DNA from: Amphiscolops sp. MND2022
Taxonomy: Eukaryota
Direction: 5' to 3'
NCBI GenBank assembly: GCA_964187785.1
Contig: OZ076412.1
Location: forward strand, 17,732,001-17,796,000
DNA length: 64,000 nucleotides
The notes under the pieces were generated by a model. The model had not been told where the DNA came from and ran no database searches. It saw nothing but the letters and a program-made list of their open reading frames with translations. The position numbers and the translations under genes were made by a program. Within the stretch, counting starts at the first letter, position 1, and each line of letters begins with the position of its first letter. Shown here one piece after another: positions 1 through 56,968 of this stretch.

Positions 1-120
1 TCAGAAGACAAAAGGTTAGACTTCATTGGTTTGCATAACTATACGTTTGTGTAAAGTAGCATACATTTAGATTGGTATGTGAAAATGAACTTTAACCCTT
101 ATGACTTAAGAATAATTAGG

Positions 121-306: not shown

Positions 307-1013
307 TGCAGTAAACCCCCCCTTCCCTTACTACTACCACAAATTTTTTATGCTTCCAAAAGTAGATGCGAGACCAAAGGTTTTCTTTCGTTTGATTTTT
401 TTCGTTTTTTTTTGGTTGTTGTAGCATAGAACAGAAATATTATTGTTGTCCCTAGCGGCCAATTCCCAAAGTCTGTCGTGCATTCTCATGAAACGTTCCC
501 AAAATAAGATCCCAATTTCTGGATTTCCTGGTTTTAAAATTGAAGCCCTTGTCAAATTTTTCACATGTTACTATTCGCTGCAACTTGACATCCGACAAAA
601 AATTGTCAAAAATTCGCGAAAATTCGAGGTCTTTTTGGCACGAAGAAATTTTAATTTAAATTAGACAAAATCGCCCGACTATTACAGTCATTTGTTTTTT
701 CTCAGGTCAGACACAAACGCGACGAAAACAGATATGATAGGGCGCCTGATAAGCGATATCTTATGGCACATGACCGTATGGGATTATAATGACAATGGGC
801 TCAGTGTTTAGAGCGTTAGCTTCCGAAGCAGGAGGACGGGATTCATTGGTATTTCATTTTTTGCGCCGAGCTGTTTTCGACGAGTTCCTGTTTCTCATCT
901 CCCCAAAAATCTTACCACTGAGTCATGTTCACCATGATGAAGTTATTCATGCATACACTTCCATGGCAGATCATGGTTTTAAAGTTAATTTATTTTTGGT
1001 TCCAGATTGGATT

Positions 1014-1049
1014 ATGAACTCAAGGCAACACGAAAAAGAACCCGTCAAG
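1014..1049 (+). CDS. KIF20: KIF20-like exon 1 (MNSRQHEKEPVK)
   Basis: ATG at 1014; donor GTACGT at 1050, phase 0 to VFLKIRP. Confidence 0.75.
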
Positions 1050-4000
1050 GTACGTTCTTCTGTTTTAATTGCGTCAGTTTTCTATTGCTCTATTCTGCAG
1101 CTACATATTTAACTTCATTGGTGGTGAATTCGATTATCTAGTTCATTTCCAAGTTTTCTCAACAGATTTTTCGTCTTTGGGTGAAATTTCTCGGAAAATA
1201 ATTGCAGAATATAAAGAAGTCCCGTTCCAAAAAGTTTTGCAATTTTCTATTGTCAAGTATCCATTCTCTATTGCTACCATGGTTATTTTTTGCCCAGGTT
1301 TTCTTGAAGATACGCCCGTTGAAGGCGAATGAAAGCAGTTTTCCATACGTGGTCACACAAGACAGAAAGGTGCTGAAGTTTGAAGTGCCGAACAAGAGTT
1401 CCGAGTTTTCCTTTTCCTCAATTTATGATGGCCACACTTCACAGAAAGACTTTTTCGAGCAAACAGTGCTGCCTCTTCTTGAAGATTTCAACACAGGGTT
1501 CAATTGTCTGGTGTTCACCTACGGGGTTACCAATTCTGGAAAAACATACACGTTGCAGGGAATACCCTCTGATCCTGGTTAGTCCTGATTGTTTCGTATG
1601 TATCACCTTTTTACACGGGGTGAATAAATTTACACTTGTTTTGTGTCAATAAAGTTGCGTGAAACTACAAATTAAATAGTCCAATTTTCAATTAATTACG
1701 GGAAGTGCCGTCTTTCAAATGGAATTTGTCCTGGAGAAAGCCGTATCTGAGCGTGAAATAATATTTACTTTTATTTAAAATAATTGAAACTTTTCATAAT
1801 CAAAATATTTTCATGGTTTTTGTCAATTAAGGCAAATGGGAAGTCGCGTTCGGAAACCTCAACTTTCATTGAATGTGAAAGCAAGTCATGGATGATTCCC
1901 TGATGAATTCTCGAAGTTGCCCCCCCCCCATTAATGGAAGCCGTTTCTTTAGATGTTTGATGTTTGAGTGTTAACGATGAAGTACTTTTGTTGATTTTCA
2001 AAGCGAAACGTTGCTTTTGATAATTTTTTGTAAATGCTCGTTTTGGAACAGGTAGCTTGGGTTAGTTTATTTACTATTCACTATGATCGGAGATCTGGAA
2101 GCTATGTTATTATAGAGAAAGAATTATGATTTGAACGTTTCAGATTGCCACGTTAATCTGAGCTAAAGAAAAAAACAGAATTGGCTGATAATTATTCAGT
2201 TCAATTAATACGAATAAAACCAAATAAGAAAGATAAGTAAGTATAGTTCATGTGAGTTAGCTGCCCTATGGTCGACCGTCTCATATAATGAGGGAAAATA
2301 AGCAATTGGTTAAAGAACAAAAGCTGCAGTGACACAGTAATAATGCATTTCAGAGACAAAAAATGCAGTCTCAATCGTCTAGAATAAATAGTCAACTATT
2401 GCTGATCAAACTAAATTTGACACTTTTCGCTACATCTTTCCATTCCTATTGCCGCCGTGTTGTTACCGAAAATTCGACAGCTGGAATAATAGAACCTGAA
2501 ATATTTGTAACAGGATAGATTCACTGGAAAGAGTTGTTTGGAAGGTAAAGAAAAGATGTAACATCAATTTAAGTTTGGCAAGTTACGTTTTGCGTTTACA
2601 TTTTCAGTCACATGTGCTTTTAAAATCTTCGGGATGAATAATGGGTTCGGTAGCAATAACATGGAATTCGTTCACTTCCATAAAACTCATTCTCCAATTT
2701 CGATTACTTAAACCATCCCACAGCTCGGAACTTTTAGGGCAGTTTGCGCTTGGTTGTTGACAAGGATTGTTGATTCTATCAACGAAATACCGAACAGTTT
2801 TTCTAAATTCCACCAAGTTAAACGCCGTGGCGTTTGTGGCCTCAAAGTGTTATGGTTCAGAGTTACCATCCGGGCAAACTTTACTTATACAAAGGACGAC
2901 TTCTGATGAGAATTTCTTCCTAGTGACAGTTTTTCCACCCATTTCACAAACACACAATACTTCCTTCGAAGCTTGCATATCAGAGCAACCTGCACTACAC
3001 AAGTCGACAGTGGGGATCATATAATATAATTGTATACTTCAACTGCAAGTCATCCGTCTCAAAATGGAAGCAGTTGACATCAGTTCCGTTTTCTATGTCG
3101 AATCTGAAAAGTACAAATCAGGCTGTTTCCGAGATAATTAATGTGTGAAGCAATATAGATTGTTAGCCATTCTCCAGATATGCATCAGACAATGAAGAAG
3201 CAAAACTTCCTAATGTCTTTCTAATAGCCCGCGCTATGCCTTAAAAAGTAATGCAAAACCTTAACGTTTTTGCTGTTGTCGATGTCATTGGATTCATGAT
3301 CTAAATTGCATGTTCAATTCTAATGAACATCACCTGCAATATCTGTGAATGCTGAATGCGGAACTAAAACCGCAAAAATACTTGTCTCAATATGGGATCT
3401 CTCTGATTGCAAAAATTACTTGATGTAGACGCAATAATGATGAAAATGTCGCATGAATGGGTGCAGTATGAATGGCATGCAACGTCAGAACTTCACAACT
3501 AAAATTTCGAAGCCAACGAAGGAAAAAAATATACTGAAAGTTGCTATCTCATCAGTTATGTAGCAAAAGTTTACAGGGATTTCCAAATGTAAAAGATATT
3601 CATTCAGGCAAAAGATGCCTGCAACCGGACCATTATTTGAGCCTTTAGAATCAGAAAAGTTCCCACGGAAAGGTTTCACTGTTCTGGTGTTGAAATTCAT
3701 GGTCCAAAACGATCCGGTAAAGGATTGAAATTTCCACCGACTGGGTGCTTAGGCAAATGTAAATGCTCTTTATATATTTTCTAGTGATGCCTACAAGTAA
3801 GCAAAAAACACCGTCCTTTGTAATTAACAAAGTTGGTTTTTAGGGAAGATTTGGGGTCAGCCGGAAAAATGTGATGTCATAATCTGCCGGAAAGTCGTAA
3901 TCGGGTCTCATTCCAGAAAGGTACTCACTTCATTGACATCCGAAGTGGTTGATGGAAAGTATTATTCTGCTTATGTAAAGTAGAAAATCGATTTTTTTCG

Positions 4001-7000
4001 CATTCATCAATGAATTCTTAACCAACCGGACATTTGACGCAGGGAAAACTTTTTTTCACAATATCCGACAGCAGCATATCTTCTTTGAACGAATTGATTT
4101 TTTTTCAGTCGTTGAGTTAAATCATCAAAAATAGGGAGAGTTACCAGATCAACAGGAGATCGGAAGAGTTTGAAAATGATCATCGGTGAATCCAACTGGG
4201 GCGTTTGTCATTGGTATAAGCTGCCAAAAGTTACATCAGCTCTTTTCGTGACTTGAGGCGTTCCAAAAAACCGCTGGCCAGACTTGAAATGGCCTACTGT
4301 CGAATTATTGAATGTGAAGCATTTAGATAAGAATTGAATAATTGACATAGCCAGAATAACTCGTCAATCCATATTTGTGTCTTCTGCATCGATCAGTGTG
4401 TATTATTTGGTGGAACTCTAAGGGGAATGAGTTGGTCGTTATTCGTTTACAGCAGTGACAGGAGACTTCATCGGGCAGCGCAATAGGATCTTCATTGATG
4501 TTTAGAGGCGACAAAACTGTAACCTCGAATGCATCTGAGTCTGAAGTTGAGTAGTTCTGCTCATCACAAATGAACAATTAATTGTTCGGAGCATTCACAA
4601 TCCTGCCGCAATGTTGACATTTCAAGACTTTCCGTTTGCTTCGACGAACCATTTTTCAAAACCTTAAAAAACAATCTGGTTATATAATATATTTTTGTGT
4701 TTGTGTATACATCATTTTCGCAAAAGGAAAAGTCACTTTAATAGTAGACCACCCAAATGTCGGACAATTAGATTAATAACGAGACAGAGGAAAATCCATG
4801 GGCCACTCTCTTGGTAGACCACATGTCAATGAGAAAATTGAAGTTTAACTGAATGAAAAAACTGAAGTATCTGAACACTTATGTTTGCTTAACACTTATG
4901 ACAAAAGAATCAATACAATGAAATCAGTGGAAACAAGCTGTTCCGTTTTCAGCAATATATTCGATTTTCAACATTTGACAGAAATTGTTTTCCCTACAAT
5001 TTAGCTGAAAAGTAAAAATATTAGTCAAAAGACATTTGTTCAGATGACATACGAGCAAGGGAAAGTAGAAAAGCGATCAATCGAAAATACTTACAGAATA
5101 TTTTGTTTCCTATAACGTAACGAAGTTAGCTGGATCCAAACGTTGACAAATGCGCTTTATCTTTCCCGACTATCCATTTGGAACTTATCATTGTCCCATC
5201 CCAATGAACGTGGACGAGCCAGTTGCGGTGTGTTGAATAGCGTGATTTGAATATTTGATGTTCATGAAAGTCGCTTCAGCAATTCGGTGCGGTAACCCGA
5301 GGGCGAACACATTTCCCAAATCCGACAAGTGCTCAGCTGCAGCCAGACTATGACAGACAGTTTCCAGGACTGACCCCTTATACCTCAATTGATCTGAAAA
5401 GAACAGGGCAAAGAAAAATACCTACTGTCTGCAACTATTTTGAGGTCCCGACTATTGATGAAGCTTCTACTAAACATACTTCAACGCGTTAAGGTTGTGA
5501 CATGCAAAATATTTGTGTTTTTCCGACATGTTCGAGAATTGGCTCAAAGGTCAACAATTGGTTCGAGAGTTCAGGTGCCATCATTCAATCATTTGTCCTT
5601 CAAACATAGCACATGCCTTCTACCGAATGTGGCCAACATTTTTGCACTCCTAACCGAGGACCTTTAGACGCACAGTATAAACGTAGGCATTTGAGTCCAA
5701 AAAACAACTACCTTCGTGGGGTCGATTTTGTTGACGTAAAAATACGTATCAGTAGAGTTCTCGGCCCTCTCGAAGTTGGCTCCCCAATAGTCTTGAAATT
5801 CTTGAAATTAAGTTGATCAAGTTTGAGTACTAAACAAGCTGCCTTCGAATACAAGCCTCAAACGTGAAACTTGTGCAAGGTTAAGAAGCTGTTAAACTGT
5901 TATGCCATGTTTAGAATCGAAAAGTATCCCTAACGTGAAGTAAATAAGTCTCTGTCAATGCTCAAGAACTCCGTCAGAAGCGAATTGTTTTGAATGACAT
6001 TCGCCAAAAAAACCCAAGAAATTTTAAGCCAGCTATTTTGATTTCTCGCACCTTTTGTATTGATTGCCTTGTATTGGGAACGGCCATGTTACGAGCAAGT
6101 ATCTTATGCTGGTAATAATGAAAAACGACAATTATCGATGGATAGAGTGACGATTCTTCCTGAAAACAGCTTTTCTAATTTGTAAGTTGATGAACTCCAC
6201 GAATGGACTTTTGGTGTTATCTGTGCGGTGACAGAAGTAAAGAGCGCAGTCTTTCAATTTGTTCAGAACCTGGTTTCGAGAAATTTTGAAACAGTCGTTC
6301 AGAGCCAAATAAGAGAAGGAGGCTTTTTGCTTCGGCTTTGTTTTAAATATTCAAAAGGGAACTTTTGAAACGAAAAAAATCTGAATACCGAAAGTCCAAG
6401 GGGTGTGTTTTTTTGTCTTCTAGTTTTAAAAATGTTAAATACTCTTTAAGTAACCAAAAAGGGAACCGTTCGAATGAGTTTTGTATTTGCTACTCAAAGA
6501 TACACAACGTTCGAAGAAAAATGAGCATTGCAGGCCGAAAAACAGCTAACCTTTATTCTAGCTTTGTCTGCTTTTCCGCGGAAAAGCCCCGACTAAAGAC
6601 ACTGCTGATAGTTTTTTCCATTCTCGTGAGCTTCTACAAGGAATAATTTAAAATTCTGGACTTTCAGGTATTTTACCGAGAGCCTTGGATGTCGTGTTCA
6701 GCAAAATTGCGAATCACCATGACGATGTCAATCCAATGCCCAAGTTTTTCAACCAGTTCCAAGATGCGACTGCTTCGAAAGTGGATAGCCATGAAAAACT
6801 GAAGCTCAGTCTGCTGGCTAGCTCAAACACAGGGGTACGCAGTGTGTTGAACGAGACGATGATCTCAGGGTCCACTGACAGGGAAGTGTCCATGTTCTGT
6901 CCCAGTCTCCCGGCTCAGTCTGTGGAGAGCACTGTGGCCTCTATCGTGGAAGAGCCATCTCGTGTTCTTAGTGACTCCTCCATCTTCGTGTCTCCTTCCC

Positions 7001-10000
7001 CGGACACTGCCGCCCAAGTCGGTGCTTCTAGTTACTCGATATGGGTGTCATTTCTGGAAATTTACAATGAGAAGATAACAGACTTACTTGTCCCCCCAAA
7101 GTAGGATACTTTTTATGTTATTGAAGGAATTTTCATGATTCGAGGCGGCCTTTTTGATAACTTTCTGTCTGAATTTTGCTTTTCTTGATATCAACCATGG
7201 AATGGAATGTCCAAGAAATATCACGAACTAAAAAAACCCTGAGTTCCTTTATTAAAAGAGATATCAATTAGTTTCCTTAGAAAAGGCAGTGTAAATATTG
7301 ATAAACTATTGAATGCTATTAAATTGAAGCAAATACTTGAATTGAATCGAACATTTGATTGTTGATAAAGACCATCACATTTGATTTTTCCATTTCATTG
7401 ATTACGACTGATTGGTAAAGAATAGACCGCGCGCTACGAAACCAGGTTTTTTAGCGATAAGTGACGTTTGTCCATTATTAATCGAGAAGGCGGCCGGCCA
7501 ATCTAGAAATGTGGGTTGGAAGTGGTTTTGTCACGCTGCAAGGTGTAGAGCCTCCTTGCAGTGTCAATAACGGTTCAGTGATATTAAACGGGAAAATATT
7601 AGATGCCAATAGTGTTTGATTTTGCTTTTTTCCAGTAAAAACACCAAGTCGAAGGCTCTCAAGCTCCACGAAGACTCGAGTGGCAACACGTTTGTGGGTG
7701 GTTTGTCGGAAATTAAGGTCAACTCAGCGCAGGAGGCTTGTCAAATTCTAGCGGCCGGTCAGCGCAACCTGAAGTACAGTGCAACTTCGTTGAATCAGAA
7801 GAGTTCCCGAAGTCATTGCATCTTCAACATCAAACTGGCCAAATTGACCGAGACCGGGGTGAAAGTCAGTCTCTTCTCTTTCTGCGATCTGGCTGGAAGC
7901 GAAAGACAATCCAAGGCGAAAACTAGTGGTAAGTTATCAGCTCACACATCTTCACAACTTCAAGATGTTTAACCTCTCTTTTCTACTGTAACATAGCATT
8001 CAGAGATGTGATCTGGGCGTTGACAAACTGCTGCTGCATAATTTTGAATTACATAGATCGCACATTCTTAGTTGCTATTGATCGTTTCTAGTTTTCCCAT
8101 GCATTTTTCAAATGCATTTCTGGTCGCCAAATAAAAGTGCCCCAATCAAGAGCGACTGACGGTTCGATGATTACGGCGACCATCGTTACCATTGCAGACC
8201 ATCATAGTTTCGCTTCGCACGGTCCCCTTATTGATGGTATTAAAAATAAATGAGAAAAAAACTAAAGAATTATCAGTTTTTTCTGAACATGTATTAAGTT
8301 GCTCCATTTTGAAATGAACATATGAATTGGCAGAAGTGCCAAAATGAGCAGTTTAATTGAGATTCGGTAGGGGTGAAAATAGGTAGATTCGTTCAATTAG
8401 GGAAACATTTTGCACTGTGGAACGTATCACTGGATTAAACAGGCGCTTTTGTCTGTACACGGCTTTTTTAGTCGGCGCTTCATGAAGTGAAACGCGACTA
8501 TTATAGTGACTTTTCTTTTTTTTTTTTTTTTTTTTCAATCCACACGAACTGACCAAAATAGTTCTTAAAAGTTCTACAAAATATTATTGGTCCAAAATGC
8601 ACTATTTGGTCTAGCGAACTGAACCAAAAAGGTTTTTCCTGTTTTTCCGCGTAACAAACCATACCGGGCGAGACCAAAGACTCCCCCCTTTCATTTTTTT
8701 CGGCACTGCGAGACTTTTTTTCCGAAAAAAAATTTTTTCCCCAAAGGGTCCCCCTGCATTTTTTTGATGTTTTGCGACAGAATGGATGTTGAAAAATCCC
8801 AAAGGGTCCCCCCTTTCAGTTTTTTTCGGCATTGTGAGATTTTTTCCCGAAAATGAAAATTTTTGTTTTCTTCAATTTTTTCATGTTTTGCGACAGAATG
8901 GATGTTGAAAAACCTCAAAGGGTCCTCCCTTTCAGTTTTTCGGCATTGTGAGACTTTAGCGCGCCAGGGGCTCGCGCTAGCGAGCCCCGGCGCGCCACTC
9001 GGTCCATTTTTTTTGAGTATGTAATTTTTGACTTGGAAGAGTACTTGACACTTGGAAGTCGTTTTGCTATTTTTGAGCCTTGGATATGGCGCCGACTTGG
9101 GCCGGTCCCGGCTTGTTTATCTTATTGTCGGGCGCCGCTTAGTGATGCAAGTTTGTAATTATTTTATTACCTTTATTCAGTTAATATGACTCGGTTACAA
9201 TCAGACAGTAAAGAACAAACTAGGGAAATATTTTGAATTAGGCACTGCTAGGCTTCGTTCTTTGATAGCTTTTTGATAGCACAAGCACTGTTAATCAGAG
9301 TTTTGACAGCGTTATTTTTTTCACTAAACCGCTAATTTCAAAATCACTATTTCGCTGAGAATTTAGGTAAGCGTTGGAATTTTTTCGAAATTCACTTTGG
9401 AACTGTTTTTAGAGGAAAACTTGAATTCGGACAATCTATTAGTTGCCGCTTATTTGAATCGCTGAAAACATGCTGCGCGGCCGTTAAATCGCTTATTAGC
9501 GGTGTCAAATTTTGCTGTTGATTGTTATGAACTTTCAGGCGTTGGGATGAAAGAAACAGCCAAAATAAACGCTAGCATGTTGCAACTGGGGCAGTGTTTG
9601 AAACAGCTTCGGGAAAACTGCGAGAAGAAGCAGAAAGAAAATAAAACCTTCGTTGCTTTCCGAAACTCCAAGTTGACGCACTTGTTCCAAAACGTGCTCC
9701 AGGGGTCTGGCAGAGCAGTTATGATTGTGAACATAGCATCCGACAACAGAGTTATCGACGAAACCTTCAACGCACTCAAACTCAGTGCTGTGGCCCAGAA
9801 GATATCAACCAAAGCGGCTGTCACTACTGAACAGCCCAAAATTGTACCCGAGACACCGGCTGCCGGTAAGCAACTTTTCTACCCCCCCCCCCCCCCCCAC
9901 GATCAAAAATTTTCGAGGGTATTTAGCAAAAAAAATTTCAAACTGGCCGAATTAAAAGTGAAATTTATTTCTTAACAGGAAGTTAACTTCTATTAGAATA

Positions 10001-13000
10001 ATTTTTCAATTGAACAAAACATTTTTCACACTTTTTAACTGTGAATATGTTGAAAATTAACTGTTTTTTTTGTGCTCAAAAAAGGAAGTTGTTACTAATT
10101 TGTATCGGAATTCTAAAGTTCATCCTGAGAATAAATATAGAATTAAAGGTTTCTAATTTACTTCTAAGTCATTTTATCCTTATATTTTCACAAAATTGTT
10201 TCGAAAAATTAGGTGACGGGGACAGAAAAGAACTGAAGAAAAATGTGTGATTTTGAGGAAAGGTATTGATCCTCTTTTGAGTTCTCCTTTCCGTTATATT
10301 TTGTCTTAAAATTTGGTTTAAAAGAGAGTATGTAGACAATCGTCCACCATTGTTTTCTGAGAATCCACCCAACTATGGGCAGTGATAAACATTCAAATAT
10401 TGAAATCTGAATGAATTTAAATCATCATTTAAACTTCAATTGCTTTTACGGCGTTAAGTTTAAATGGAGCCATTTGAATGGACCATTTGAATTTAAAAGT
10501 TGAAAATATATTTATTTTCCATTGAAATCTGAACTTTGAAACTTTTTTTCAGTCATTTTTTTTTCGTACGGGATTCGAGTACCTACTGAAAAATTCAGGT
10601 ATTTCGCTCGGCAGTGAGTATAAGCGTGAGATTTGAATTTCTCAAGCTGCTAACAACAATTCGGTTCTCGTTCGATAGAGAGCGAGTGGTAATTATGCAT
10701 TCGTACGCCGAATTCATTGACATGAAGCGAATGAGTGTTAATAATTCTTTCGCCGAGAGCTTCGCCTGCATTCAAATGCGAATGCGAAACTTCGTCTACT
10801 CTTAGTAGTTATATTTTCTTTAGTCCGAGAAGAATTAAAGGCGGTGCAAACTGGTACAGTGATTAAAAGTGCGCTATGTAAATGATTGAGATATGCTTCT
10901 GTTATTGAACATGAAAGCTTAAAAGCAGAAATATACTGTGCCCCGCAGGGGCCTATTTTTGACAGAAATTGAACGCAGAAATCGACAATGAGTCGTAATT
11001 TCGCTAGTCTGAATAGTTAAAGTTCCTACAGTTTACTGAGTATCGGTAAACCATCTTAAGCAATTATTGAAGGAGGGTTCTCAAAAAAGTTCCTTCCGAA
11101 GAGAGCCATTTTTTTTGAATTTTCATTTCTCTGTGCAATTCAAATCACTGACTGTGGGCCTTATTACTCCATCGCCAGAAATAGTTTGGTTCCATGAATG
11201 GTTCACCCGAATGTTTGTCAAGGTTAAGACGACAGCCCTCCCTCGTGGACTATGGCACTTATAGAGGACTCTTCCCTAGCTGGTCAGTTCACTCCCAATC
11301 CATTGTTGTGAACTGAGGGCTCTCTAGCATGATTACGTAATTAAGATGATTGAGTATTCTTTATTCTTCTACTTATATATCTGGTATGGTTTTGGAACCC
11401 TTCGTGAAATTGTCGGTTCTATTATCTGAATTTTGTGTGCAGTGAAGACGTATCGCAGTGCCTTGGGGGTGCCGAGTTCGGCCAAAAAATGCAAACTGTC
11501 TTTCGACAAAAAAGGGCCCCTCAGGCAGATCCAGGAGGAAGATAATGACGTGGCTGATGAAACCGCAGTTGTTACGTCACCAGAAATAAGTTCAATCCAC
11601 ACAGATGAGAACGGAGAAGACGAGGGTTCCGAGTTGCTGGCCATGTCGGATGATGACCAGTCTGATCAAGAGGAGGAAGAGGAGGACGAAAGTGGAAGCG
11701 AAGAAGGAAGTGAGGAGAGTAGTGACCAGGAGGAAGATTCGGAAGTTGTTAGTAGTTTCGGCCGCCTTTCTAGTCAGCGCATTCGTTAGAAAACACAGAC
11801 TATAGTAGTGCTTTTTTTGAACACCAGTGAACTTACAGATTTCTCAATTTTTAGTCGGCGCTTTCGTAGAAAAAGCAGACTATAGTTGTGACTTTTTTAA
11901 AGACCACCTAACTGACAGATTTTATACGTTTCATAAGTTGCTCAGTAACTTGTAACTTCGACTGCCAGAGAATAATCAGGGTTTTTGAGGTCTGAGAAGC
12001 AAAAGGACGTGGGTTCGATTCTCGCACTTGACAAAAAATTTTAATACTAGTTTTTTTTCGGCTTTGTGAAATTTTTCGAAATGTTTCTTTGTGTCTCCAA
12101 AGGGTCCCCCTTCAATTTTTAATATTTTGCAACAAATTGGATTTGAAAAAAGCCCAAAGGGTCCCTCGTTTACGATTTTCGGTCTTGTGTGGTTTTCTCG
12201 GCACACACTATCCGAATTTTGTTTTCAGACCAGTGTTTTTTCCATGCAACTTTTTTCTAATTTTTTCTTATCGAAGCCCCCTCAATTTGTTCTATAACGA
12301 AACGTTTTGCGAGCATAGAGGATTCCTTAGGGTTTTCGGCACCATTACGAAACATATCCCCGCGAGCAAGTTCCCAGATCTTGCGACTTGCATTAATAAC
12401 CAATCACAGTGAGTTATTATGATGTTTACTGTTTTACACTTTTCTCCTATTACACCAAGTGATAATCAGTTACACTGAATGACAAAAATTCACTAATTGA
12501 CTGGTTTACACTATTTTCCGGTCCATAAATTTACACTAATTGACTGTATTACGCACTGATGCAGTACTACGCACTTTGACTAAATTACGCGATTTTCCAC
12601 TACGCATTTTGACTATGCGACTTACCGGAGATCTTCATAGAAATTTTTCAAAAAAATTTCCTCAAGTTATCGTTATTTGATAGTTTTCTGTGGAGCAAAA
12701 TGGTTTTTGTTGTCTCCAGTTGTGGAAAAAGTGGTCTTCGAGTCTTATGCGTATTCCTTGGGATATTTTTGACACTGTAAAATTGATGAAATTTTAACAA
12801 GTGTCCTTTGGCAAATTCAAAAAACTTTACTCTTCTGAACCTTGAGCGGGCACCGACTTGGGCTGTTCCCGGCTTGTTATAAATTGCTTCCGAAATTTGC
12901 AGCGTAAGTACGGCCACTTTGTAAGTGGATGAGTGCGTGGCTTTGAAGCAAGGGTATACGAGTTCGAATCCGGGTATGGACAATTTTTTGATGTTCGCAA

Positions 13001-40485: not shown

Positions 40486-40870
40486 AATGAGAAGTTGAAT
40501 TGAACTTAAAGTTGATTGTGTTATTGCATTCTAATGAGTTAAAAGCTGCAGACTCCTGCCGCAATTCGACTTGCCCACCCATTTTAAGGCGAATATTTTT
40601 ATTTTTTTGTGTGTGTGATTTGAATAATGAGCTGGGGTGTGATTTGAATTCTGAATTAGTTATGTTTTTGTCATTTGTGATAATTATTTGAAATAATTTT
40701 GTTTTGCTCCGAAATGGATGCTGTCTTTTGAGCGCTGAAAAAGCTAGTGTTGTTGAATTCAAAATTTTTAGTTGCGAATGTTTTCGGCATTTCTTATATC
40801 CATATATTGAAAAGTCATGATATAATGAAAATGACTTCTCGGTTGTCATGATCAGGTTTTTCAGTTTGTA

Positions 40871-42899: not shown

Positions 42900-43000
42900 T
42901 AAAAAAGTGGACCTTCCAGTGTGGGGTCTGTGTTCTGGCGAAAAAAGTGTCACTGTAAGAGTCGGGCATTTTTTGCTTCACAAAAAGCGTCGACTAAAAA
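42900..43000 (-). mobile_element. HINE family 1 isolated 5' head
   Basis: CACTGTAAGAGTCGGGC...AAAGCGTCGACTAAAAA. Confidence 0.6.
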
Positions 43001-43450
43001 CACGGTTTAAGCTTTCCTTCATTTTTTCAAAGGTAAAAACAGGAGCGTTTTGGTGATGCACAAACATTTGGTTTGCCTTCCGTAATTGTTTTATTGTGAG
43101 GTTCACTATTTTCTATATGTATTTAGAAACTATCTTGTTATCTCGTGTCCTCTAGCCCCGACATGCGTGCTACCTCTAGAAACGTTTGCAATCTATTCAA
43201 GGTTTTTTGCATTCACCACCTTTCAGTCTCCGTTAACTTCACATGTTTTGAAAACAATATTTCACTAGCCGAAAATATATATTTGTTCTCGGCGCCGTTT
43301 CACACATTTCTGAGATCTCGTTTGAGTTGAGTTAGTTGGATTGAAAAGACGTCGAATACTTCATAGTTGAATCATTGGTTTGAAATCTATTCATGTTTTT
43401 AGAGAGTTTTGCAGAGTACCATTGTAGTAGTTTCTCCAGTGGTAAGGACA

Positions 43451-45472
43451 ATGGAATTAGTGGGCACTCTCTACTCCAATGTGCCTGACGCTTTCGACGA
43501 CTCTTCTCATCAACAGAATTTGACCACCGGCGCCGATGGCGAGGGAGAATACTTCTTCTTCTCGGATGGCCAATCAGAGGCCTCCGACACAGAAATAGGA
43601 CACAGCGAAGTCATCATCGAGAGTGCGTCCAATATTTACTACGACGAGAACCAGCCACCGGACATTATGCACGAAGACATAGAATTGGAGCATGAAGAAG
43701 ATGTGATATCACATGTAGAGGAGACAGTTGTAGACGAGGGGTACCGACCGGTGCTCGACGAGAAAGAACGGGAGAAGGTGTACAGAATGGCCATAATAGA
43801 CTCGGAGCTGACCCCTTCGCCACGAGGAAGCAAGTTCTACAACTGCGATCAGTGTGACGAATCGTTCGCTCGCAAAGTGATGCTGGAGAAACATATTGAG
43901 AAGTTTCACCAGGATGACCCAAGGCCATACACCTGCACAATTTGTCTGAAGAAGTTTAAGAAACGAAGCAAGCTGCAGAAACACAGCTGGACCCATATTG
44001 GGCAGCTAGTTGACCAAAAGAAGCCGAAAAGCTCGAAGCGAGCGTCGCTTGCTTCCTCTTCAGATGCGAAAAAGACCAAAAGTAAGGGTTTCGTGAAAAA
44101 AGGCAAACATTCTAGATTCAATTGCGACAAATGTACTGAATCGTTTTCAAATCCCACTAAGCTTCTCAATCATAAGAAGAAAGTACACATACCAATCAAC
44201 AGATGTATCATTTGCGAGGAAGAGTTCGAAACGAGGAAAGCACTCGAAGCTCATCGCAGAGAACTTCATCCCAATGAAAGACCTTACCGTTGCTCTTTTT
44301 GCAAAAAGCGATTCATCTCCGAGGCCTTGTTAATCAATCACAACAGACTCCACAATGGCGAAGCTCCATTCAGATGTACACCTTGTGACAGAGGTTTCTT
44401 ATCTCGCAGGAATTTGGAGAGACACCTGGATACTCACATAGAATCCCAATGCAAGGTTTGTGGAAAAATGACCTTCACTTCCAAGGAAAAGAAAGCGCAC
44501 GAAAAGAAACACTTAACACCCGAAGATTTATACGACTGTCGTTTTTGTGGAGAATCATTCTCCCGAACCAACGACCTCACCCGACATTGCAACGACTTCC
44601 ATAGCGACATGATGACCTCTTCAAAGCCCAAGAGTTCCAACAACTCGCAACTCGTCAAATATTGCAAGATATGCTCTATCGAATTTAAAAACCCCACGCA
44701 GTATAGGAAACATTACGTCCTCACTCACAGCGAACCCTTTTTCTGCCGATATTGTCCCAAACGTTTCCGCCGCATAAAAATGGTAGAAAAGCACGAAAAG
44801 CAATTTCACTCGACTCAGATGGTCTTCGAATGCAAAAACTGCAATGAAACATTCAGAGTGCAACACGAACTCAAAACCCATAGTCGTGTTGAGCACGGAG
44901 CTCTGAAAAGGCGGCATTACTCGCTGAATTGCACCGTCTGTGGAGCCAAATTCGAAAAGCCCACTTACTTGGAAGCTCACAAGCGAGTGCATGATCACGA
45001 AAAGCCGTTCCAGTGTGAAAAAACTGGGCTGCGTTTCACCCAGCTGTCTATGCTGAAATCTCACAACGATATGCTTGCAAGCAATAAAGTATACGAGTGT
45101 CAAATATGCACGAGAAAGTTTACGAAGGCTTCAGCTATGCAGGAACACCAGGTTGTACATTCAGGCTTGGGTTTCAGAAGTTTGGCCTCTGGGTGCGAGG
45201 ATCAAGTGTTCACAGATCAAATGAGAATGCTGAAATACGAAAGACGAGTGCATGCCGGAGAGAATGTGTTCCAGTGTCTGGTATGTCACCAAAGCTTCGA
45301 CCACAGGGCCTGTTTGTTCAGACACGAGTTTACCCACAGTACAGGAGACCAACCCTTGTTCTGCATAGTCGGGGGAGTTCAGATCTCAGACAACATCGTC
45401 GTTCTAGACTACAAAACTGAGTGCTTTCTTGCCCGTAGACGTGAGCAAATGCTGGCGTTGCATTTGGGCTGA
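43451..45472 (+). CDS. Multi-C2H2 zinc-finger protein, ~673 aa, intronless (ZNF-1)
   Basis: First ATG at 43451; acidic N-terminus; many CxxC...HxxxH fingers with HPNERPY/HNGEAPF/HDHEKPF linkers; degenerate fingers at the C-terminus. Confidence 0.92.
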   Translation: MELVGTLYSNVPDAFDDSSHQQNLTTGADGEGEYFFFSDGQSEASDTEIGHSEVIIESASNIYYDENQPPDIMHEDIELEHEEDVISHVEETVVDEGYRPVLDEKEREKVYRMAIIDSELTPSPRGSKFYNCDQCDESFARKVMLEKHIEKFHQDDPRPYTCTICLKKFKKRSKLQKHSWTHIGQLVDQKKPKSSKRASLASSSDAKKTKSKGFVKKGKHSRFNCDKCTESFSNPTKLLNHKKKVHIPINRCIICEEEFETRKALEAHRRELHPNERPYRCSFCKKRFISEALLINHNRLHNGEAPFRCTPCDRGFLSRRNLERHLDTHIESQCKVCGKMTFTSKEKKAHEKKHLTPEDLYDCRFCGESFSRTNDLTRHCNDFHSDMMTSSKPKSSNNSQLVKYCKICSIEFKNPTQYRKHYVLTHSEPFFCRYCPKRFRRIKMVEKHEKQFHSTQMVFECKNCNETFRVQHELKTHSRVEHGALKRRHYSLNCTVCGAKFEKPTYLEAHKRVHDHEKPFQCEKTGLRFTQLSMLKSHNDMLASNKVYECQICTRKFTKASAMQEHQVVHSGLGFRSLASGCEDQVFTDQMRMLKYERRVHAGENVFQCLVCHQSFDHRACLFRHEFTHSTGDQPLFCIVGGVQISDNIVVLDYKTECFLARRREQMLALHLG

Positions 45473-49529: not shown

Positions 49530-50026
49530 AAACAAGACGGGAACGTCCCAAGTCGGCGCCATATCTAAGGCTCAAAAATATTCAAGGAACAACTATTAGA
49601 AACATTTGGAAAAAATTTAATTTTTTTCAAAAAATATTTTTAAAATCGCACAATGCCGAAAAACTCAAGAAAGGCCATTTAGGCTCATTAAACCATTTTT
49701 CAAACCGAAAACTTCAAAAAAATGCAAGGGGTACCCTTTGATAGAATTCGAAAATTTTCGAAAAAAAGTCGCATAGTGCCGAAAAAACACAAAGGGGGAC
49801 CCTCTGGTCTCACCTGTACTTTTGGAAGCATAAAAAATTTACGGTTTACTGCGAGAATCGAACTCACGATCTCCTGCTTTTCAAAAAATTAGTTGAACAA
49901 ATGAACAAAAGATTGTAAGAAAAGTGGACCATTCAGAGTGAGATTGTAGGCTGAAAAAGAAAAAAAAACTACCCACTGTAATAGTCGGGCTTTTTTCCTT
50001 AAGGGAAAAGGCGCCGACTAAAAAAA
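49530..50026 (-). mobile_element. HINE family 1 copy
   Basis: AACAAGACGGGAACGTCCCAAGTCGGCGCC ... AGTCGGGC...GGCGCCGACTAAAAAA. Confidence 0.8.
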
Positions 50027-50297
50027 CGATGCCGTTGTTTCGACGAGTAGTCAAGAATATTGTAAATGAATTGTCTGTGAAGGTCCCTTTATTCTATGGT
50101 ACGCTTCACCGTAAATTCAATGAAACAACTGCGAATAGTTGTCCAGGTAAGGAGGTTTGATATGTACCAGACCTAATTATCTTATTGTTTTACTATAATA
50201 TAATGCATGCGTCGAATACGAGTTTTTGACTTCAAACGTTCAAAATCTTTTTAGGTTAATTATGCAACAAATCCCTGACAGTTAGACGTGCAACCAA

Positions 50298-51428
50298 ATG
50301 ACGTTAGAAGCAGAACTAGCAAACTTGCGATTTCTGAATTACAGTGCCGACACCGCGGTAGCAGAGCACAGAGACGAAAACCCGTTAATATTGTATTTAG
50401 ACAATGGCAAGTCTTTCCAACCCCAGGCTAATCAACAGCCACCCTTTCGACAGATACAAATTATTCACATGAAACAGAATGACCTTCCTTTGCCGCCTTT
50501 GACCTCAACTAACCATGGAAGTAATGAAAGCTCTGCCAGTCATAGGGATATTATGGAAGACCCCGAGTCTGAGACAGCAGAAATTGGGAACCAGATCAAG
50601 TTTGAGTGCCACGAGTGTGGCCAGAAGTTTGACCGGTTAGTCCGGCTCACAGAACACAACTGTTATGAGGAGGACCCGTTCTCGAAAAAGGCCAAACCAT
50701 TGCAGCGGGTTTCCGTCCCGAGATCTTCCAATGTGCCCAATCAACGACAACCTCAATATTTCACAAACTCTCACCTATCAACCTCTAGTAGCAGTAATAG
50801 TAATAGGAAATACCCCAATCATGGCCATTTGAAGCATTCCAATCAAGTTACCTCAAAAATTGCCCTTGCATCGGACATGATAAAGTGCCCTTACTGTGGT
50901 TGTATTTTCAACCAATCATATTTTGACAAATATCATCTGCAGAAGTGTTCAGAAGCTGTGTTCAAAGAAGAACAACTCATCACCTTCGAGCGCAGTCCTT
51001 ATAGAAAAAAGAAAAAAGCAGCAAACCAAATAAGAACTGGTTTTGGGCGGCGTTCCTCAGAAATGAAACGGAAAAGACAGCACAAGTTGTCAATCGCGAG
51101 CATACTTAGACCAGTTAAAACTTGGGTATGCGAGCAATGTGGTCAGGTATTTAAGACAGGAAAGCAACAGAAGAACCATTTCTGCATTTATTTGGACTAC
51201 AAACCCTTCGTATGTTTAGTATGCAATCTGGTATTTTCCACAAGAAATGGCCTCTACCGCCATGAAGAGAAAACTCACTCCAACTGTTATGCTGTGTTAC
51301 GCGCTAAGTTGAAACAAGATACGCCTCATGATTTCAAGAATGCGATGCCTCTATACGAATTGAGTTACAGCGTGGAGAACTTTCTCAGACGGAGAAGTAA
51401 AGCTTCCGAGTTTTTGCGGGCCCCGTAA
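50298..51428 (+). CDS. Zinc-finger protein with dispersed C2H2/C2HC fingers, 376 aa (ZNF-2)
   Basis: FECHECGQKFDRLVRLTEHNC, CPYCGCIF..HLQKC, WVCEQCGQVF..KNHFC, PFVCLVCNLVFSTRNGLYRHEEKTH; a possible upstream exon is unresolved. Confidence 0.85.
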   Translation: MTLEAELANLRFLNYSADTAVAEHRDENPLILYLDNGKSFQPQANQQPPFRQIQIIHMKQNDLPLPPLTSTNHGSNESSASHRDIMEDPESETAEIGNQIKFECHECGQKFDRLVRLTEHNCYEEDPFSKKAKPLQRVSVPRSSNVPNQRQPQYFTNSHLSTSSSSNSNRKYPNHGHLKHSNQVTSKIALASDMIKCPYCGCIFNQSYFDKYHLQKCSEAVFKEEQLITFERSPYRKKKKAANQIRTGFGRRSSEMKRKRQHKLSIASILRPVKTWVCEQCGQVFKTGKQQKNHFCIYLDYKPFVCLVCNLVFSTRNGLYRHEEKTHSNCYAVLRAKLKQDTPHDFKNAMPLYELSYSVENFLRRRSKASEFLRAP

Positions 51429-53289: not shown

Positions 53290-55122
53290 ATGGAGAGTAA
53301 AAAGGAGTACACATGTGATGTATGCCAAAAATGCTTTGCTCGAGACAAAGCGTTGATCAACCACAAGAATCTCGCTCATCCCCAAAAAGATGCTCCTGCT
53401 AAGTCTTCTACTGCAGTCGCTTCGATGCGAAAAAGAAAAGAACTTTTCAAGCCGAAAATTAAGCTGAAAAAGATCAAGTTGAAAACAGTTGCCGCCGAGT
53501 ACAATCCCGCTCCTTACTTTGGGTTCAAAACTTTGACAGATATGTTCAAAAAGTCTATGAAACCTTGCGTGGAAAAGATGCAGATTCCTGAAAAGTTGTG
53601 GGGTATTGTTGAAGACATTGAGGAAAAGTATAAAGATACTTGTGGTAAGGGAAGCAGCAAAAATTCAAAGCCTAGAATTGATCCCAAGAAACTACCACCT
53701 GTCTCAAAAGAATCAAAGGTCGACGCCGTGTCTGAGAAAGAATCAACACTTCAACTGAGCGGCAAAGCACTAAATCAGGACAGTTTATCAGATGAAACAA
53801 AAGTTTCCGTTGCTCAAAGTCTCAATGAAGTATTAACTGGTGTTAATACTGGAATCTCTCATGGCTCTGATGGAAAAGGATACTGGTGTGAAATTTGTAG
53901 CCGCGGCTTCTCTCGGTTGGCCGCCCTTGAAAAACACAAAAGAGCCAGCCATGATAACAAAACATCTAGCACCGTCAGTTCGCCAGCTTCCAAAAAAGCG
54001 ACCCCAGATCATTCTAGAAAGAGTTTGAAACACTTGAAGCGTAGACGCGAACTTGATAAAATGAGAGACCAAATGTCGAATAGAAAGAGAATGAAAAAAC
54101 ATGTTGCCCGTTCCTTCACACACAGTACTGGTTTCTCCAGGAGGCCAGGAACAATCGTCGATGTGTATGATCATGAGAAGCGACAAAGGAGTTATAGCAG
54201 TCAAGAATCGGTTAGTTTTTTGTGTTTGAATTTTTGTCTATTACCTTTGAAAATATTTGCCATCGCGCCTTAATTTCAAGTCTTCTTCAGAAAATGGAAA
54301 ACTTTCAAACAAACTTTAGTGGTCGAAGTTTTGGATATAAACATAGGATAGGCGTTTTGTTAAACTAAGTTTCAGACATTTGTCATTGTTTATCCTTTTT
54401 AGTGAAATTGTTTTTTTCAGGACTTGAAACGATCCAAACTTGAAAATTCTTTCGTCCAAGATTATGACTATCATTTGTCACCATCCAAGAAGGAAAGCTC
54501 AAAAACTTTTTCCTCCGATGGCAGCAAAGGAACTTGGCGTTTCAAATACTATTGTGATTATTGCTACCGAGCGTTTTCCAGCACCCGTAGATTGGAAGAA
54601 CATGAAAGTGGCCAATGTCCCGTCATGGTCAAGAAAAAGGTTGAGAAGAAAAGGTCACCTAAGCTTGACCCTAAACGAATCGATGACCAGCCAAAGGAGA
54701 AAAGTAGCAAGAAGCTTTTTTATTGCGACAGTTGTGGAAGAAAGTTCGGGTCTCTTTCCGCGTTGAAAGTTCACGCCCAAACTCATTTGAAGGACAAAAG
54801 ATTCCCTTGCGAGTTTTGTGGGCTTGGATTTGCTGACAACAAGGAGTTGGCCAGACATAGGCTGGACCATAATTATGACTCAGAGCACAGATGTTTCATG
54901 TGTAACAAACTTTTCCTGGAAAAAGAAGAATTGCTTCAACATGAATTGCTGCATAAAACAAACGAAGACACTTTCTGCTCCGTCAAGATTTTGGGCCCCA
55001 CTGAAGCACCGGGAAAACCCGGATTCCTCGAAGTGCTGGAGCTCGGATCTGTGATCGAAGATGTTATCGAAAGGAAACGCAAGGAACTTGAAAACTCTAT
55101 TGGTTTCTATCGTGCGGTATAA
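53290..55122 (+). CDS. C2H2 zinc-finger protein, 2 exons (53290-54210, 54421-55122), 540 aa (ZNF-3)
   Basis: Fingers YTCDVCQKCF..HKNLAH, YWCEICSRGF..HKRASH, YYCDYCYRAF, FYCDSCGRKF..HAQTH, FPCEFCGLGF..HRLDH, HRCFMCNKLF..HELLH; phase-0 intron GTTAGT...tttcag. Confidence 0.9.
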
Positions 55123-56584
55123 TTATACATTTTTTTATGTTTTATATTCGTATTGGTGTTTGTTTTCAAAATATTTCAAGGCACAGCATTGAATGTTTAA
55201 CGTTTAGATCGCGCTTGTTTCAGATTTTGTATCAGAAGAGAGCTATCGTGTTGTTACGTTCTGATCAAAATTGTTTCCTTCTTGTCATTGTTTTTTTTTT
55301 ACTTTTTTAAAATTAGTATACTGATTCGAAATAAATTTTTCTACTACAAATCCATCAAGTCCTACCGCTACCGAAATCACTAAATCATCTGCGGGGTCGT
55401 TTAAACACCATAATGACACTTAATCGTACAGTCAGTATTGTCTCATAGGTTGAAATTCAGAGCTGGATGTCTCAATAGCTGGATGATCATATATAGATTC
55501 ACTCGAGTGAACCAGTTTTTTTTCGCAATTTCGCTATAATTTTAATTATCGCAGTTGAAAACTGCAGACGCAGAATGTGACCTTTGCTTGGTGCGTGTAA
55601 CAAAAAACGTAAAATTGTTCAGCAGTTTTGGCCAAAAACTGCAAAAATGGCATTTGAACAAATCTTCTAGTTTAGTTTCATAAATTCATGCTCTTCTGTA
55701 ACTTTCCACTCATTTTCTTCGGTACTGGCATCATTCAATAATGGACCAACTTTAATTTGCTGTCAGTGAAGCCGATTTTCGACTCTGTTTCGTTCTCGCG
55801 TAAAAAACGCGATCGAAAGTATACTAGGATTGTCACATCTATACGAAATTTTTTTAAAAAGTTAACTCGTTTCCAGATGTAATCGAACCTTGTTTTATAT
55901 TGATTGAATCAAATGAACTTTTCCCTATTTTGGAAGAAGTCTCAATCTGTTGAACTTCAGTGATATCTGTCGTTCTCCGCTCGCTTGTCACATGATGCAA
56001 AAATCTTGTGTAAGAGTTTTCTGGAGTCTAGATCTGTGCTCCCACGAGCACTGGAGACTCCTGGGCCAGTGAAGTTGGGCATCAGGTGTTAAAAATCAGT
56101 AATTGAAGAAAATTCTAGGATTGAGAATTCTCACAAAAATTTTATTGATTCGCCCTAAATCTGCTACAATTACTCAAGGTATTATAATATTCAGATTTTC
56201 TGCAAGACAATTTTACAGACTCTGCTCTTGGGTTCTGAAAAAAGTATTGCCATTCAAATGGAAATGAAGCTTTGAGAAAAAAGGTTCTGAAAAAGTCTCT
56301 TTCTGTGCCAACAACTTTTTGAATAGTAGTCAATTTCTTTTGCAAGCAATTAGTAAAATGTTAAATTAAAAATCAAATTGGCGACCGCAAGTAGAAATAT
56401 TCTACAAGGCAACCTTTCAAGATCAAAAAAGGATTTTTGCGGACTGAAAGCACCAGTCTAGCGCCAACTAAAAATGCTCAAACGGGGAACCTTGATAATT
56501 TTCGTCTGCTGTCTTTTTCGATCTATTTTTTCATTTCAGGTTTCATGAGTCATCTTTGATGATTATATTGCTGTTTTTGAGTAA

Positions 56585-56968
56585 ATGGATTATTGGAACT
56601 CTCGCGAGCAAGAGTTGATTAAGAAGCATGCGGAAATTTTAAAACGAAGACAAGAATTGCTAGATGAAAGCATCCAAGAGTTTGTTCAAACCCGACATGA
56701 CGTTACCGACACTGATCATCAAAACATGCTTAAGACTGATCATTATTGGTTTGCGAAGAAACAACGGAACGAAAAACTAGTATCTGAAATCAATGACCTT
56801 GTGCAGAAAATAAAGTTATCACGGGGACGAAAAGAAGACACTTTAGCGGCTACAAAACTAAAAATTCAGAAAGAAGCATACTGGAATTATGTAGCGGCTT
56901 GTTTGCCACAGTGGTTGAAAACTATAGAACAATTGGAGCAAAGATCATCCCGAAACCCCGGCAGTTGA
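56585..56968 (+). CDS. CEP15: CEP15/C3orf14 (DUF4570)-like small coiled-coil protein, 127 aa
   Basis: E.ELIKKHAEIL..R..LL, RNEKLVSEI and EAYWNYVAACLPQW match the C3orf14 pattern as I recall it (E..LSKRHEEI..QR..LL; RN..LL.DI; YW..V...IPKW); similar length. Confidence 0.75.
   Translation: MDYWNSREQELIKKHAEILKRRQELLDESIQEFVQTRHDVTDTDHQNMLKTDHYWFAKKQRNEKLVSEINDLVQKIKLSRGRKEDTLAATKLKIQKEAYWNYVAACLPQWLKTIEQLEQRSSRNPGS

What the first reader, a model, noticed from the sequence alone, without database searches (positions are those of the whole stretch)
990..56600. Six co-oriented genes, each with a 3' splice acceptor just before the start codon: possible operon or SL trans-splicing
Seen: all six host genes are on +. 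Pyrimidine-rich AG acceptors end at 1005 (ATG 1014), 40864 (ATG 40871), 43414/43439 (ATG 43451), 50254 (ATG 50298), 53280 (ATG 53290) and 56539 (ATG 56585). I could not assign an upstream donor exon to any of them. Established: unpaired acceptors near the ATG plus tight co-oriented spacing characterise spliced-leader trans-splicing and operons in nematodes, tunicates and flatworms. Inference: this lineage may do the same. Ordinary 5'-UTR introns are the alternative.
Basis: partly seen in the sequence, partly recalled or inferred. Interest (0 to 1): 0.72.

Follow-up and report, generated by a model that had tools for sequence, protein, structure and literature searches.

The report
Known acoel spliced-leader acceptors, operon unproven
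Six neighbouring genes of the acoel worm Symsagittifera roscoffensis each have a splice acceptor just before the start codon, which fits this animal's published habit of adding a shared 31-base leader to many mRNAs; nothing shows that the six genes form an operon.

Summary
All six plus-strand genes have a pyrimidine-AG acceptor 6-45 nt before a start codon that is conserved in a related species. This is well above chance (about 1e-4).

The genome carries the exact published spliced leader (SL) of the acoel Symsagittifera roscoffensis, where 30.2% of genes are reported as SL trans-spliced. I found the SL RNA genes as a 904-bp tandem array, each unit linked to a 5S rRNA gene. Each has a 31-nt exon, an AG|GTAAGT donor and an Sm site.

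A genomic fossil elsewhere shows the mechanism. It is an SL-capped, intron-less retrocopy of an XRN exonuclease gene. Its parent gene has TTTTCAG 11 nt before the ATG, the same geometry as here.

For gene 2 (C12orf56 homologue), a related species' contig starts with the last 5 SL bases, joined at the orthologous acceptor.

No RNA data could be reached for the other five sites. Gene 4 has a strong local donor 108 nt upstream, so it may simply have a 5'-UTR intron.

The operon reading has no positive support:
- spacers are 0.38-4.8 kb;
- the tight kinesin-C12orf56 spacing is not conserved;
- three of the genes are zinc-finger paralogues.

Other windows of this scan noted the same pattern. The phenomenon is already known and of low interest.

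The parts
994..1005 (+). Acceptor of gene 1 (ttttggttccAG), 8 nt before ATG 1014
   Evidence: no donor scoring 8/9 or better within 1.5 kb upstream
1014..40485 (+). Gene 1, a kinesin. Exon 1 is 1014-1049. Exon 2 starts at 1299 and carries the motor N-terminus and P-loop. The last exon is 40340-40485. An LTR retroelement sits on the minus strand in an intron at about 16-24 kb.
   Evidence: Pfam Kinesin 1.1e-20 on 9502-9975; ORF translations; last exon conserved in the relative
40486..40864 (+). Spacer of about 380 nt between the kinesin stop and the gene 2 acceptor. It is single-copy DNA with no AATAAA or ATTAAA.
   Evidence: flat single-copy depth in DNA runs; the same spacer is 4.8 kb in the relative
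40853..40864 (+). Acceptor of gene 2 (caggtttttcAG), 6 nt before ATG 40871. This is the best-supported SL trans-splice site of the six.
   Evidence: The orthologous contig L015 begins AATAG|TTATTC-ATG. The relative's genome has ATTTCAG|TTATTTGC-ATG.
40871..42373 (+). Gene 2, a DUF4551/C12orf56 homologue; one exon, 500 aa; AATAAA lies 170 nt after the stop
   Evidence: Pfam PF15087 3.5e-80
43392..43439 (+). Three candidate acceptors of gene 3, ending at 43402, 43414 and 43439. They lie 48, 36 and 11 nt before ATG 43451, with no upstream ATG after any of them.
43451..45472 (+). Gene 3, a C2H2 zinc-finger protein; one exon, 673 aa
   Evidence: 77% identical orthologue in L026
50138..50254 (+). 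Candidate ordinary 5'-UTR intron of gene 4. The donor CAG|GTAAGG has its last exon base at 50146. The acceptor tctttttAG ends at 50254.
   Evidence: Only 11 donors score 8/9 or better on the plus strand of the whole window, so 0.02 are expected in 110 nt. The donor has no counterpart in the relative.
50262..50285 (+). Short upstream ORF (7 codons, starts ATGCAA) in the gene 4 leader; the relative also has one
50298..51428 (+). Gene 4, a C2H2 zinc-finger protein, 376 aa
53269..53280 (+). Acceptor of gene 5 (tgagtttttcAG), 9 nt before ATG 53290
   Evidence: the relative has tgtttttaAG 8 nt before its ATG
53290..55122 (+). Gene 5, a C2H2 zinc-finger protein. It has two exons (53290-54210 and 54421-55122) and a 210-nt cis intron with TCG|GTTAGT and tttttttcAG.
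   Evidence: phase checked by hand
56528..56539 (+). Acceptor of gene 6 (ttttcatttcAG), 45 nt before ATG 56585. It is followed by a 4-codon upstream ORF at 56545-56559 and a second upstream ATG at 56559.
   Evidence: the relative has catttatAG followed by a 4-codon upstream ORF
56585..56968 (+). Gene 6, a CEP15-like protein, 127 aa
   Evidence: Pfam PF15134 5e-07; 85% identical orthologue

Best explanation
The window comes from the acoel Symsagittifera roscoffensis or a very close relative. These sites are the first acceptors of six ordinary, probably separately transcribed genes.

Most of them are probably spliced-leader (SL) trans-splice sites. The spliceosome would join the 31-nt leader exon of the SL RNA to the AG. 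The SL RNA genes lie in a 904-bp tandem array, each unit linked to a 5S rRNA gene. Everything upstream (the outron) is discarded. The result is mRNAs with 5' UTRs of 37-79 nt.

What is shown:
- The animal has the SL and canonical SL RNA genes.
- SL addition at a TTTTCAG acceptor 11 nt before an ATG is recorded in the genome as a retrocopy of another gene.
- The acceptors here are non-random.

What is well supported: gene 2 is trans-spliced at 40864 (about 0.85).

What is inferred only: the same for genes 1, 3, 5 and 6 (about 0.5-0.7 each) and for gene 4 (about 0.4).
For: 1. PMC9911081 gives the SL sequence and reports 10,433 genes (30.2%) as SL trans-spliced in S. roscoffensis.
2; that SL is in the window's own genome. 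There are 1,854 matches to its 3' part plus GT, mostly in an array on contig C1 at 16.23-16.42 Mb.
3. Searches, on locus L018: the SL exon is at 1495-1525, followed by AG|GTAAGT. A stem-loop pairs the exon with the intron. A single-stranded Sm site AATTTTTGA lies at 1591-1599. A 5S rRNA gene scores 117 bits. The fold z-score is -3.5.
4; a retrocopy on contig C7 has the SL joined to AGTTTTTTGCG-ATG of an XRN exonuclease ORF, with intron 1 removed. The parent gene on C12 reads GGTTCGTTTTCAG|AGTTTTTTGCG-ATG.
5; an orthologous contig from another species (83% nt identity) starts AATAG|TTATTC-ATG. That is the last 5 SL bases at the place where both genomes have TTTCAG.
6; the enrichment over chance is about 1e-4.
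7; acceptors sit at matching places in a related species for genes 2, 4, 5 and 6, although the flanks no longer align.
8; upstream donors are not enriched (4 observed against 5.2 expected at 7/9 or better).
Against: - No RNA read or transcript of this species was seen at any of the six sites. The four runs found behave as DNA, with flat depth and no joints.
- The gene 2 evidence is only 5 nt, from a contig of another species whose RNA origin is inferred.
- Gene 4 has a near-consensus donor 108 nt upstream.
- Genes 4 and 6 keep upstream ATGs after the proposed site.
- In the relative, genes 3 and 6 have only weak acceptors.
- Only 30% of genes are reported as trans-spliced, so six of six would be unusual if the genes were independent.
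Confidence: 0.6

Rival explanations
1. Most of the acceptors are ordinary 5'-UTR introns. They would be cis-spliced to local non-coding first exons, each with its own promoter, and no leader would be added.
For: Gene 4 has CAG|GTAAGG 108 nt upstream of its acceptor, where 0.02 such donors are expected. The cis intron of gene 5 uses the same tttttttcAG type of acceptor, so the motif does not tell cis from trans. About 70% of genes in this species are not reported as trans-spliced.
Against: No donor scoring 8/9 or better lies within 1.5 kb upstream of the other five acceptors, and donors scoring 7/9 or better are not enriched. The gene 4 donor has no counterpart in the relative. The gene 2 orthologous contig carries AATAG, the SL end, at the junction. 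The XRN example shows that this geometry is used for SL addition.
Confidence: 0.25
2. This is an operon. Some or all of the six genes, most plausibly kinesin and C12orf56, are transcribed as one precursor, and SL trans-splicing cuts it into separate mRNAs.
For: The genes are co-oriented, and the order and orientation of all six genes (kinesin to CEP15-like) are kept in a related species. The kinesin-to-gene 2 spacer is about 380 nt of unique DNA with no AATAAA. That would pass the under-1-kb criterion used for the flatworm Macrostomum lignano. After removing its roughly 110-bp repeat, the gene 2-to-gene 3 spacer is about 0.93 kb.
Against: No polycistronic RNA was seen. The other spacers are 1.0-4.8 kb. 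The kinesin-to-gene 2 spacer is 4.8 kb in the relative, with AATAAA 120 nt after the kinesin stop. Only two of the six genes have AATAAA within 300 nt of the stop, so its absence says little. Genes 3-5 are zinc-finger paralogues (24-25% identity), so tandem duplication would explain part of the co-orientation. Gene 1 has a mobile element upstream. Other windows of this genome show the same acceptor pattern, so the pattern is not special to this cluster.
Confidence: 0.1
3. The acceptors are chance T-rich AG motifs in AT-rich DNA and have no function.
For: The motif is common, at 4.2 per kb. For genes 3, 4 and 6 several alternative AGs lie nearby.
Against: Six of six within 50 nt has p about 5e-5, and four of six within 12 nt has p about 1e-4. 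The acceptors recur at matching places in a related species whose flanking DNA no longer aligns.
Confidence: 0.03

Closest known systems
SL trans-splicing in Symsagittifera roscoffensis (Martinez et al., G3 2023, PMC9911081)
   Same: The leader sequence is found exactly in this genome. The SL RNA has a donor, an Sm site and the canonical fold. The acceptors close to the ATG are what that paper's 10,433 trans-spliced genes imply.
   Different: The paper writes the leader as 32 nt. The array genes and the XRN retrocopy show a 31-nt exon ending AAATAG, so the last A belongs to the acceptor exon. The words I searched in the paper turned up no 5S linkage, acceptor motif or operon. I could not check whether these six genes are on its list.
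SL trans-splicing and operons in the flatworm Macrostomum lignano (Ustyantsev and Berezikov 2021, PMC8629364)
   Same: About 30% of genes are trans-spliced. The acceptor motif is [T/C]TNCAG. The genome is repeat-rich, which inflates intergenic distances.
   Different: There, operons were called from SL and poly(A) read peaks plus repeat-adjusted spacing under 1 kb, with a mode near 100 bp. Here there are no read data. Only one spacer is short, and it is not conserved.
Caenorhabditis elegans SL1 outron trans-splicing and SL2 operons
   Same: The acceptor is of the UUUUCAG type, a few nt before the ATG, with no upstream donor. SL RNA genes are linked to 5S rRNA genes in tandem repeats.
   Different: No second, operon-specific leader was looked for or found here. 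The spacers are far longer than the roughly 100 nt of nematode operons.

Membership tests
SL trans-spliced genes (outron acceptors) | The organism has SL RNA genes: a leader exon, a GT donor and an Sm site | tested here: met
   There are 1,854 matches. In L018 the exon is at 1495-1525, followed by AG|GTAAGT, and the Sm site AATTTTTGA is at 1591-1599.
SL trans-spliced genes (outron acceptors) | The mature mRNA carries the non-genomic leader joined exactly at the AG | tested here: inconclusive
   Gene 2 only: an orthologous contig of another species starts with the last 5 leader bases at the orthologous AG. Genes 1 and 3-6 have no RNA data and no retrocopies in the genome.
SL trans-spliced genes (outron acceptors) | The acceptor near the 5' end is not paired with an upstream donor in cis | tested here: inconclusive
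   Five sites have no donor scoring 8/9 or better within 1.5 kb, and weaker donors sit at background density. Gene 4 has CAG|GTAAGG 108 nt upstream. Weak real donors cannot be excluded from sequence alone.
SL trans-spliced genes (outron acceptors) | This species uses this acceptor type and geometry for SL addition | tested here: met
   The XRN parent gene reads TTTTCAG|11 nt|ATG. Its SL-capped, spliced retrocopy is joined at that AG.
Eukaryotic operon resolved by SL trans-splicing | A polycistronic precursor RNA spans adjacent genes | not testable with these tools
   Only DNA-like runs were offered.
Eukaryotic operon resolved by SL trans-splicing | Short intercistronic distance (about 100 nt, or under 1 kb after removing repeats) | tested here: not met
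   The spacers are about 380, 1030-1066, 4782, 1852 and 1417 nt. Only the first clearly passes, and the second is borderline after removing a 110-bp repeat.
Eukaryotic operon resolved by SL trans-splicing | Tight linkage kept in related species | tested here: not met
   Gene order and orientation are kept. The kinesin-to-gene 2 spacer, however, is 4.8 kb in the relative against about 380 nt here.

The most novel reading that the evidence does not exclude
The kinesin and the C12orf56 homologue, separated by about 380 nt of unique DNA without a canonical poly(A) signal, are co-transcribed and resolved by SL trans-splicing, possibly together with further genes of the cluster. As far as the searched literature shows, this would be the first operon described in Xenacoelomorpha.
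Probability: 0.1. Interest if true: 0.5.

Novelty: already known. Interest (0 to 1): 0.2.

Why it matters
The finding would have mattered if it had revealed SL trans-splicing in a new lineage. For this animal that was published in 2022-23, so the six sites are a local instance of a known property.

Two questions remain open:
- Do acoels have operons? Neither of the two papers in the library that mention a spliced leader in acoels was found to report operons (the word is absent from the genome paper).
- Is the fraction of trans-spliced genes much higher than the reported 30%? This window and other windows of the scan show the acceptor-before-ATG pattern at nearly every host gene.

Both can be tested directly with the existing public RNA-seq data.

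Tried and rejected
- **RNA reads.** The look-up of sequencing runs returned four runs of one study, none on record as RNA. Laid on 40000-45999, they gave flat depth, no joints and contig breaks only at repeats, so they are DNA. Both caps are used.
- **Exact-protein look-ups** of genes 2 and 3 found only a genomic contig.
- **Protein searches for transcript contigs.**
  - The whole gene 2 protein gave one orthologous Logan contig, which was useful.
  - A mixed profile of the five N-termini found only genomic copies of gene 6.
  - A mixed profile of genes 3-5 found no transcript contigs.
- **More distant DUF4551 contigs** (L034, L035) are from unrelated organisms and have no leader.
- **Fossil retrocopies of the six genes.** An SL-plus-exon junction pattern for gene 2 and DNA searches for genes 1 and 3-6 found only the genes themselves.
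- **Rfam on the window** gave nothing. The SL itself is absent from the window.
- **My first acceptor rule** (a 10-nt tract with no AG) was too strict. It missed sites of the same form as the proven XRN acceptor, so I replaced it.
- **Absence of AATAAA after the kinesin.** I rejected this as operon evidence, because four of the six genes lack a nearby hexamer.
- **Not attempted:** a search for a second, SL2-like leader class, and repeat-adjusted lengths for the three longest spacers.
Full report
**What is in the window.** The DNA is animal-like, at 36-42% GC up to 60 kb and about 50% beyond. The stretch 1014-56968 holds six plus-strand genes:
- A multi-exon kinesin at 1014-40485. Exon 1 codes 12 residues, and exon 2, from 1299, carries the motor N-terminus and P-loop. 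The motor domain is confirmed by Pfam.
- A single-exon DUF4551/C12orf56 homologue at 40871-42373.
- Three C2H2 zinc-finger genes at 43451-45472, 50298-51428 and 53290-55122. The last has a 210-nt intron at 54211-54420.
- A 127-residue CEP15-like gene at 56585-56968.

Retroelement ORFs lie on the minus strand inside a kinesin intron, and there is a LINE reverse transcriptase beyond 60 kb.

**The observation.** The distances from the AG to the ATG are 8, 6, 36 and 11 (plus an unlisted one at 48), 43, 9 and 45 nt.

I tested this against chance with the motif [CT]4AG, which occurs 4.2 times per kb on this strand. A random position has such a site within 50 nt upstream with probability 0.19, and within 12 nt with probability 0.054. 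Six of six within 50 nt and four of six within 12 nt each come to about 1e-4 or less. The motif was chosen after looking, so the true significance is somewhat weaker, but the pattern is not chance.

**Which animal, and what is already known.** Earlier notes of this scan named the acoel Symsagittifera roscoffensis and a published leader. I checked both claims.
- The genome paper (PMC9911081) gives the leader sequence and reports that 10,433 genes (30.2%) are SL trans-spliced. The word operon does not occur in it.
- The leader is present exactly in the window's own 1.07-Gb assembly.
- Its 3' part followed by GT occurs 1,854 times, mostly in a tandem array on contig C1 at 16.23-16.42 Mb with a 904-bp period.
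- One repeat unit (L018) contains the 31-nt leader exon at 1495-1525 and the donor AG|GTAAGT. A stem-loop pairs the exon with the intron, followed by a second stem-loop. The unit also has a single-stranded Sm site AATTTTTGA and, 200 nt further on, a 5S rRNA gene.

The lineage-level inference is correct, but it is not new. A literature search found no paper other than this one and its preprint that mentions a spliced leader in acoels.

**A genome-only calibration of what an SL acceptor looks like here.** Among leader copies not followed by GT, one on contig C7 is joined to AGTTTTTTGCG-ATG and an open XRN 5'-3' exonuclease ORF of at least 497 residues (XRN_N, 1.4e-104).

The same 37 bases occur once more, on contig C12. 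There the genome reads GGTTCGTTTTCAG|AGTTTTTTGCG-ATG, and the first exon ends at a GT intron that is absent from the C7 copy. [quoted passage not shown]

This shows three things:
- A TTTTCAG acceptor 11 nt before the start codon is a trans-splice site in this animal.
- The leader exon is 31 nt long.
- The geometry of the six sites in the window is the geometry this species uses.

**Direct evidence for the six sites.** This is where the case is thin.
- The read tools offered only four runs of one study. They behave as DNA: even depth across genes and spacers, no joints, and breaks only at repeats.
- Protein-based routes to transcript contigs gave one useful hit. It is a 1,510-nt Logan contig of another species, 85% identical in protein and 83% in DNA, and it hits only this gene in the genome.
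- That contig begins AATAG|TTATTC-ATG. At the same place the window has TTTTCAG|TTTGTA-ATG, and a third species' genome has ATTTCAG|TTATTTGC-ATG.
- The contig therefore departs from both genomes exactly at the AG and carries the last five bases of the leader. This is short but specific, and I rate trans-splicing of gene 2 at about 0.85.
- For the other five genes, no transcript contigs and no retrocopies were found.

**Comparative evidence.** Another assembly (L026, L027) holds the same genes in the same order and orientation, at 55-85% protein identity. The kinesin's last exon lies upstream of them. Non-coding DNA no longer aligns. Even so, the start codons are conserved and acceptors recur at matching places:
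- Gene 2: 8 nt before the ATG.
- Gene 4: 34 nt before the ATG, followed in both species by a short upstream ORF starting ATGCAA.
- Gene 5: 8 nt before the ATG.
- Gene 6: catttatAG, followed in both species by a 4-codon upstream ORF.
- Gene 3: only weak candidates in the relative.

This supports real exon boundaries at these AGs. It does not by itself tell cis-splicing from trans-splicing.

**Cis or trans.** Donors matching the consensus at 7 or more of 9 positions are at background density upstream of the acceptors (4 observed, 5.2 expected). None scoring 8/9 or better lies within 1.5 kb of five of them.

Gene 4 is the exception. CAG|GTAAGG ends at 50146, 108 nt upstream, where 0.02 such donors are expected. 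The chance of one such coincidence over all seven sites is about 0.12, and the relative has no counterpart. Gene 4 may thus have an ordinary 5'-UTR intron. The cis intron of gene 5 uses the same kind of acceptor, so the motif alone cannot decide.

**Operon.** Nothing positive was found.
- The spacers from stop codon to acceptor are about 380, 1030-1066, 4782, 1852 and 1417 nt.
- The short kinesin-to-gene 2 spacer is unique DNA without AATAAA. However, four of the six genes lack a nearby hexamer, so its absence is uninformative.
- In the relative the same spacer is 4.8 kb, with AATAAA 120 nt after the kinesin stop.
- The three zinc-finger genes are paralogues, so tandem duplication would explain part of the co-orientation.
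- The 10 kb fetched upstream of gene 1 are filled with mobile-element ORFs: integrase, an A32-like ATPase and a type-B polymerase. Gene 1 is therefore not a downstream cistron of a tight operon.
- First readers saw the same acceptor-before-ATG pattern in other windows of this genome. That fits a genome-wide habit rather than a special cluster.
- By the operational rule used for Macrostomum lignano (co-oriented trans-spliced genes less than 1 kb apart after removing repeats), the kinesin-C12orf56 pair would qualify and the next pair is borderline. I keep about 0.1 for a real polycistronic unit.

**Verdict.** The trans-splicing reading is probably right for most of the six sites, but it is already known for this species. 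The operon reading is unsupported. Interest is low. The decisive test is to map leader-containing reads and 3'-end reads from the public runs named in the paper onto this region.

Noticed in passing
L001 (G000:C7, about 10868860-10870392, minus strand) and L037:1480-1600 (G000:C12:51521015): An SL-capped, intron-less retrocopy of a host XRN 5'-3' exonuclease gene with at least 497 open codons. Its intron-containing parent gene has TTTTCAG 11 nt before the ATG. The retrocopy might still be a working retrogene.
   Followed up: partly
L001 and L012, the 25 nt upstream of the leader copy: Two leader copies on different contigs (C7 and C3) share the same 25 nt upstream of the leader (they end in ttttatcgaaa), although different sequences follow the leader. 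This is unexplained. It may be a second kind of SL gene or a preferred insertion site.
   Followed up: no
L018 (G000:C1:16235380-16238406); array at C1:16.23-16.42 Mb: SL RNA genes and 5S rRNA genes alternate in a 904-bp tandem array. The copy at L018:2399-2415 is cut after 17 leader bases by an insertion.
   Followed up: partly
window 50262-50285 and 56545-56559; L026:13986-14015 and L027, about 9969-9983: Short upstream ORFs follow the acceptors of genes 4 and 6 in both species (7 and 9 codons; 4 and 4 codons). They may regulate translation.
   Followed up: partly
window 42890-43000 and about 49920-50030: A roughly 110-bp element with about 200 times single-copy depth in DNA runs lies a few hundred nt upstream of gene 3. 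A similar element lies about 100 nt upstream of the candidate first exon of gene 4.
   Followed up: no
window 16100-23900, minus strand: Two tandem copies, offset by 3,595 bp, of a retroelement pol region (reverse transcriptase and integrase-like ORFs) lie inside a kinesin intron. They cause the strong AT skew there.
   Followed up: no
L039 (G000:C4:17722001-17732000), just upstream of the window: ORFs with integrase core, poxvirus A32-like packaging ATPase and type-B DNA polymerase hits, the gene set of a Polinton/Maverick-like element. Observed only.
   Followed up: no
window 120-310: About six tandem copies of a roughly 30-bp unit (gggattcaaaaattacacttagtggttt) lie 700-900 nt upstream of the kinesin acceptor.
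   Followed up: no
   Followed up: no
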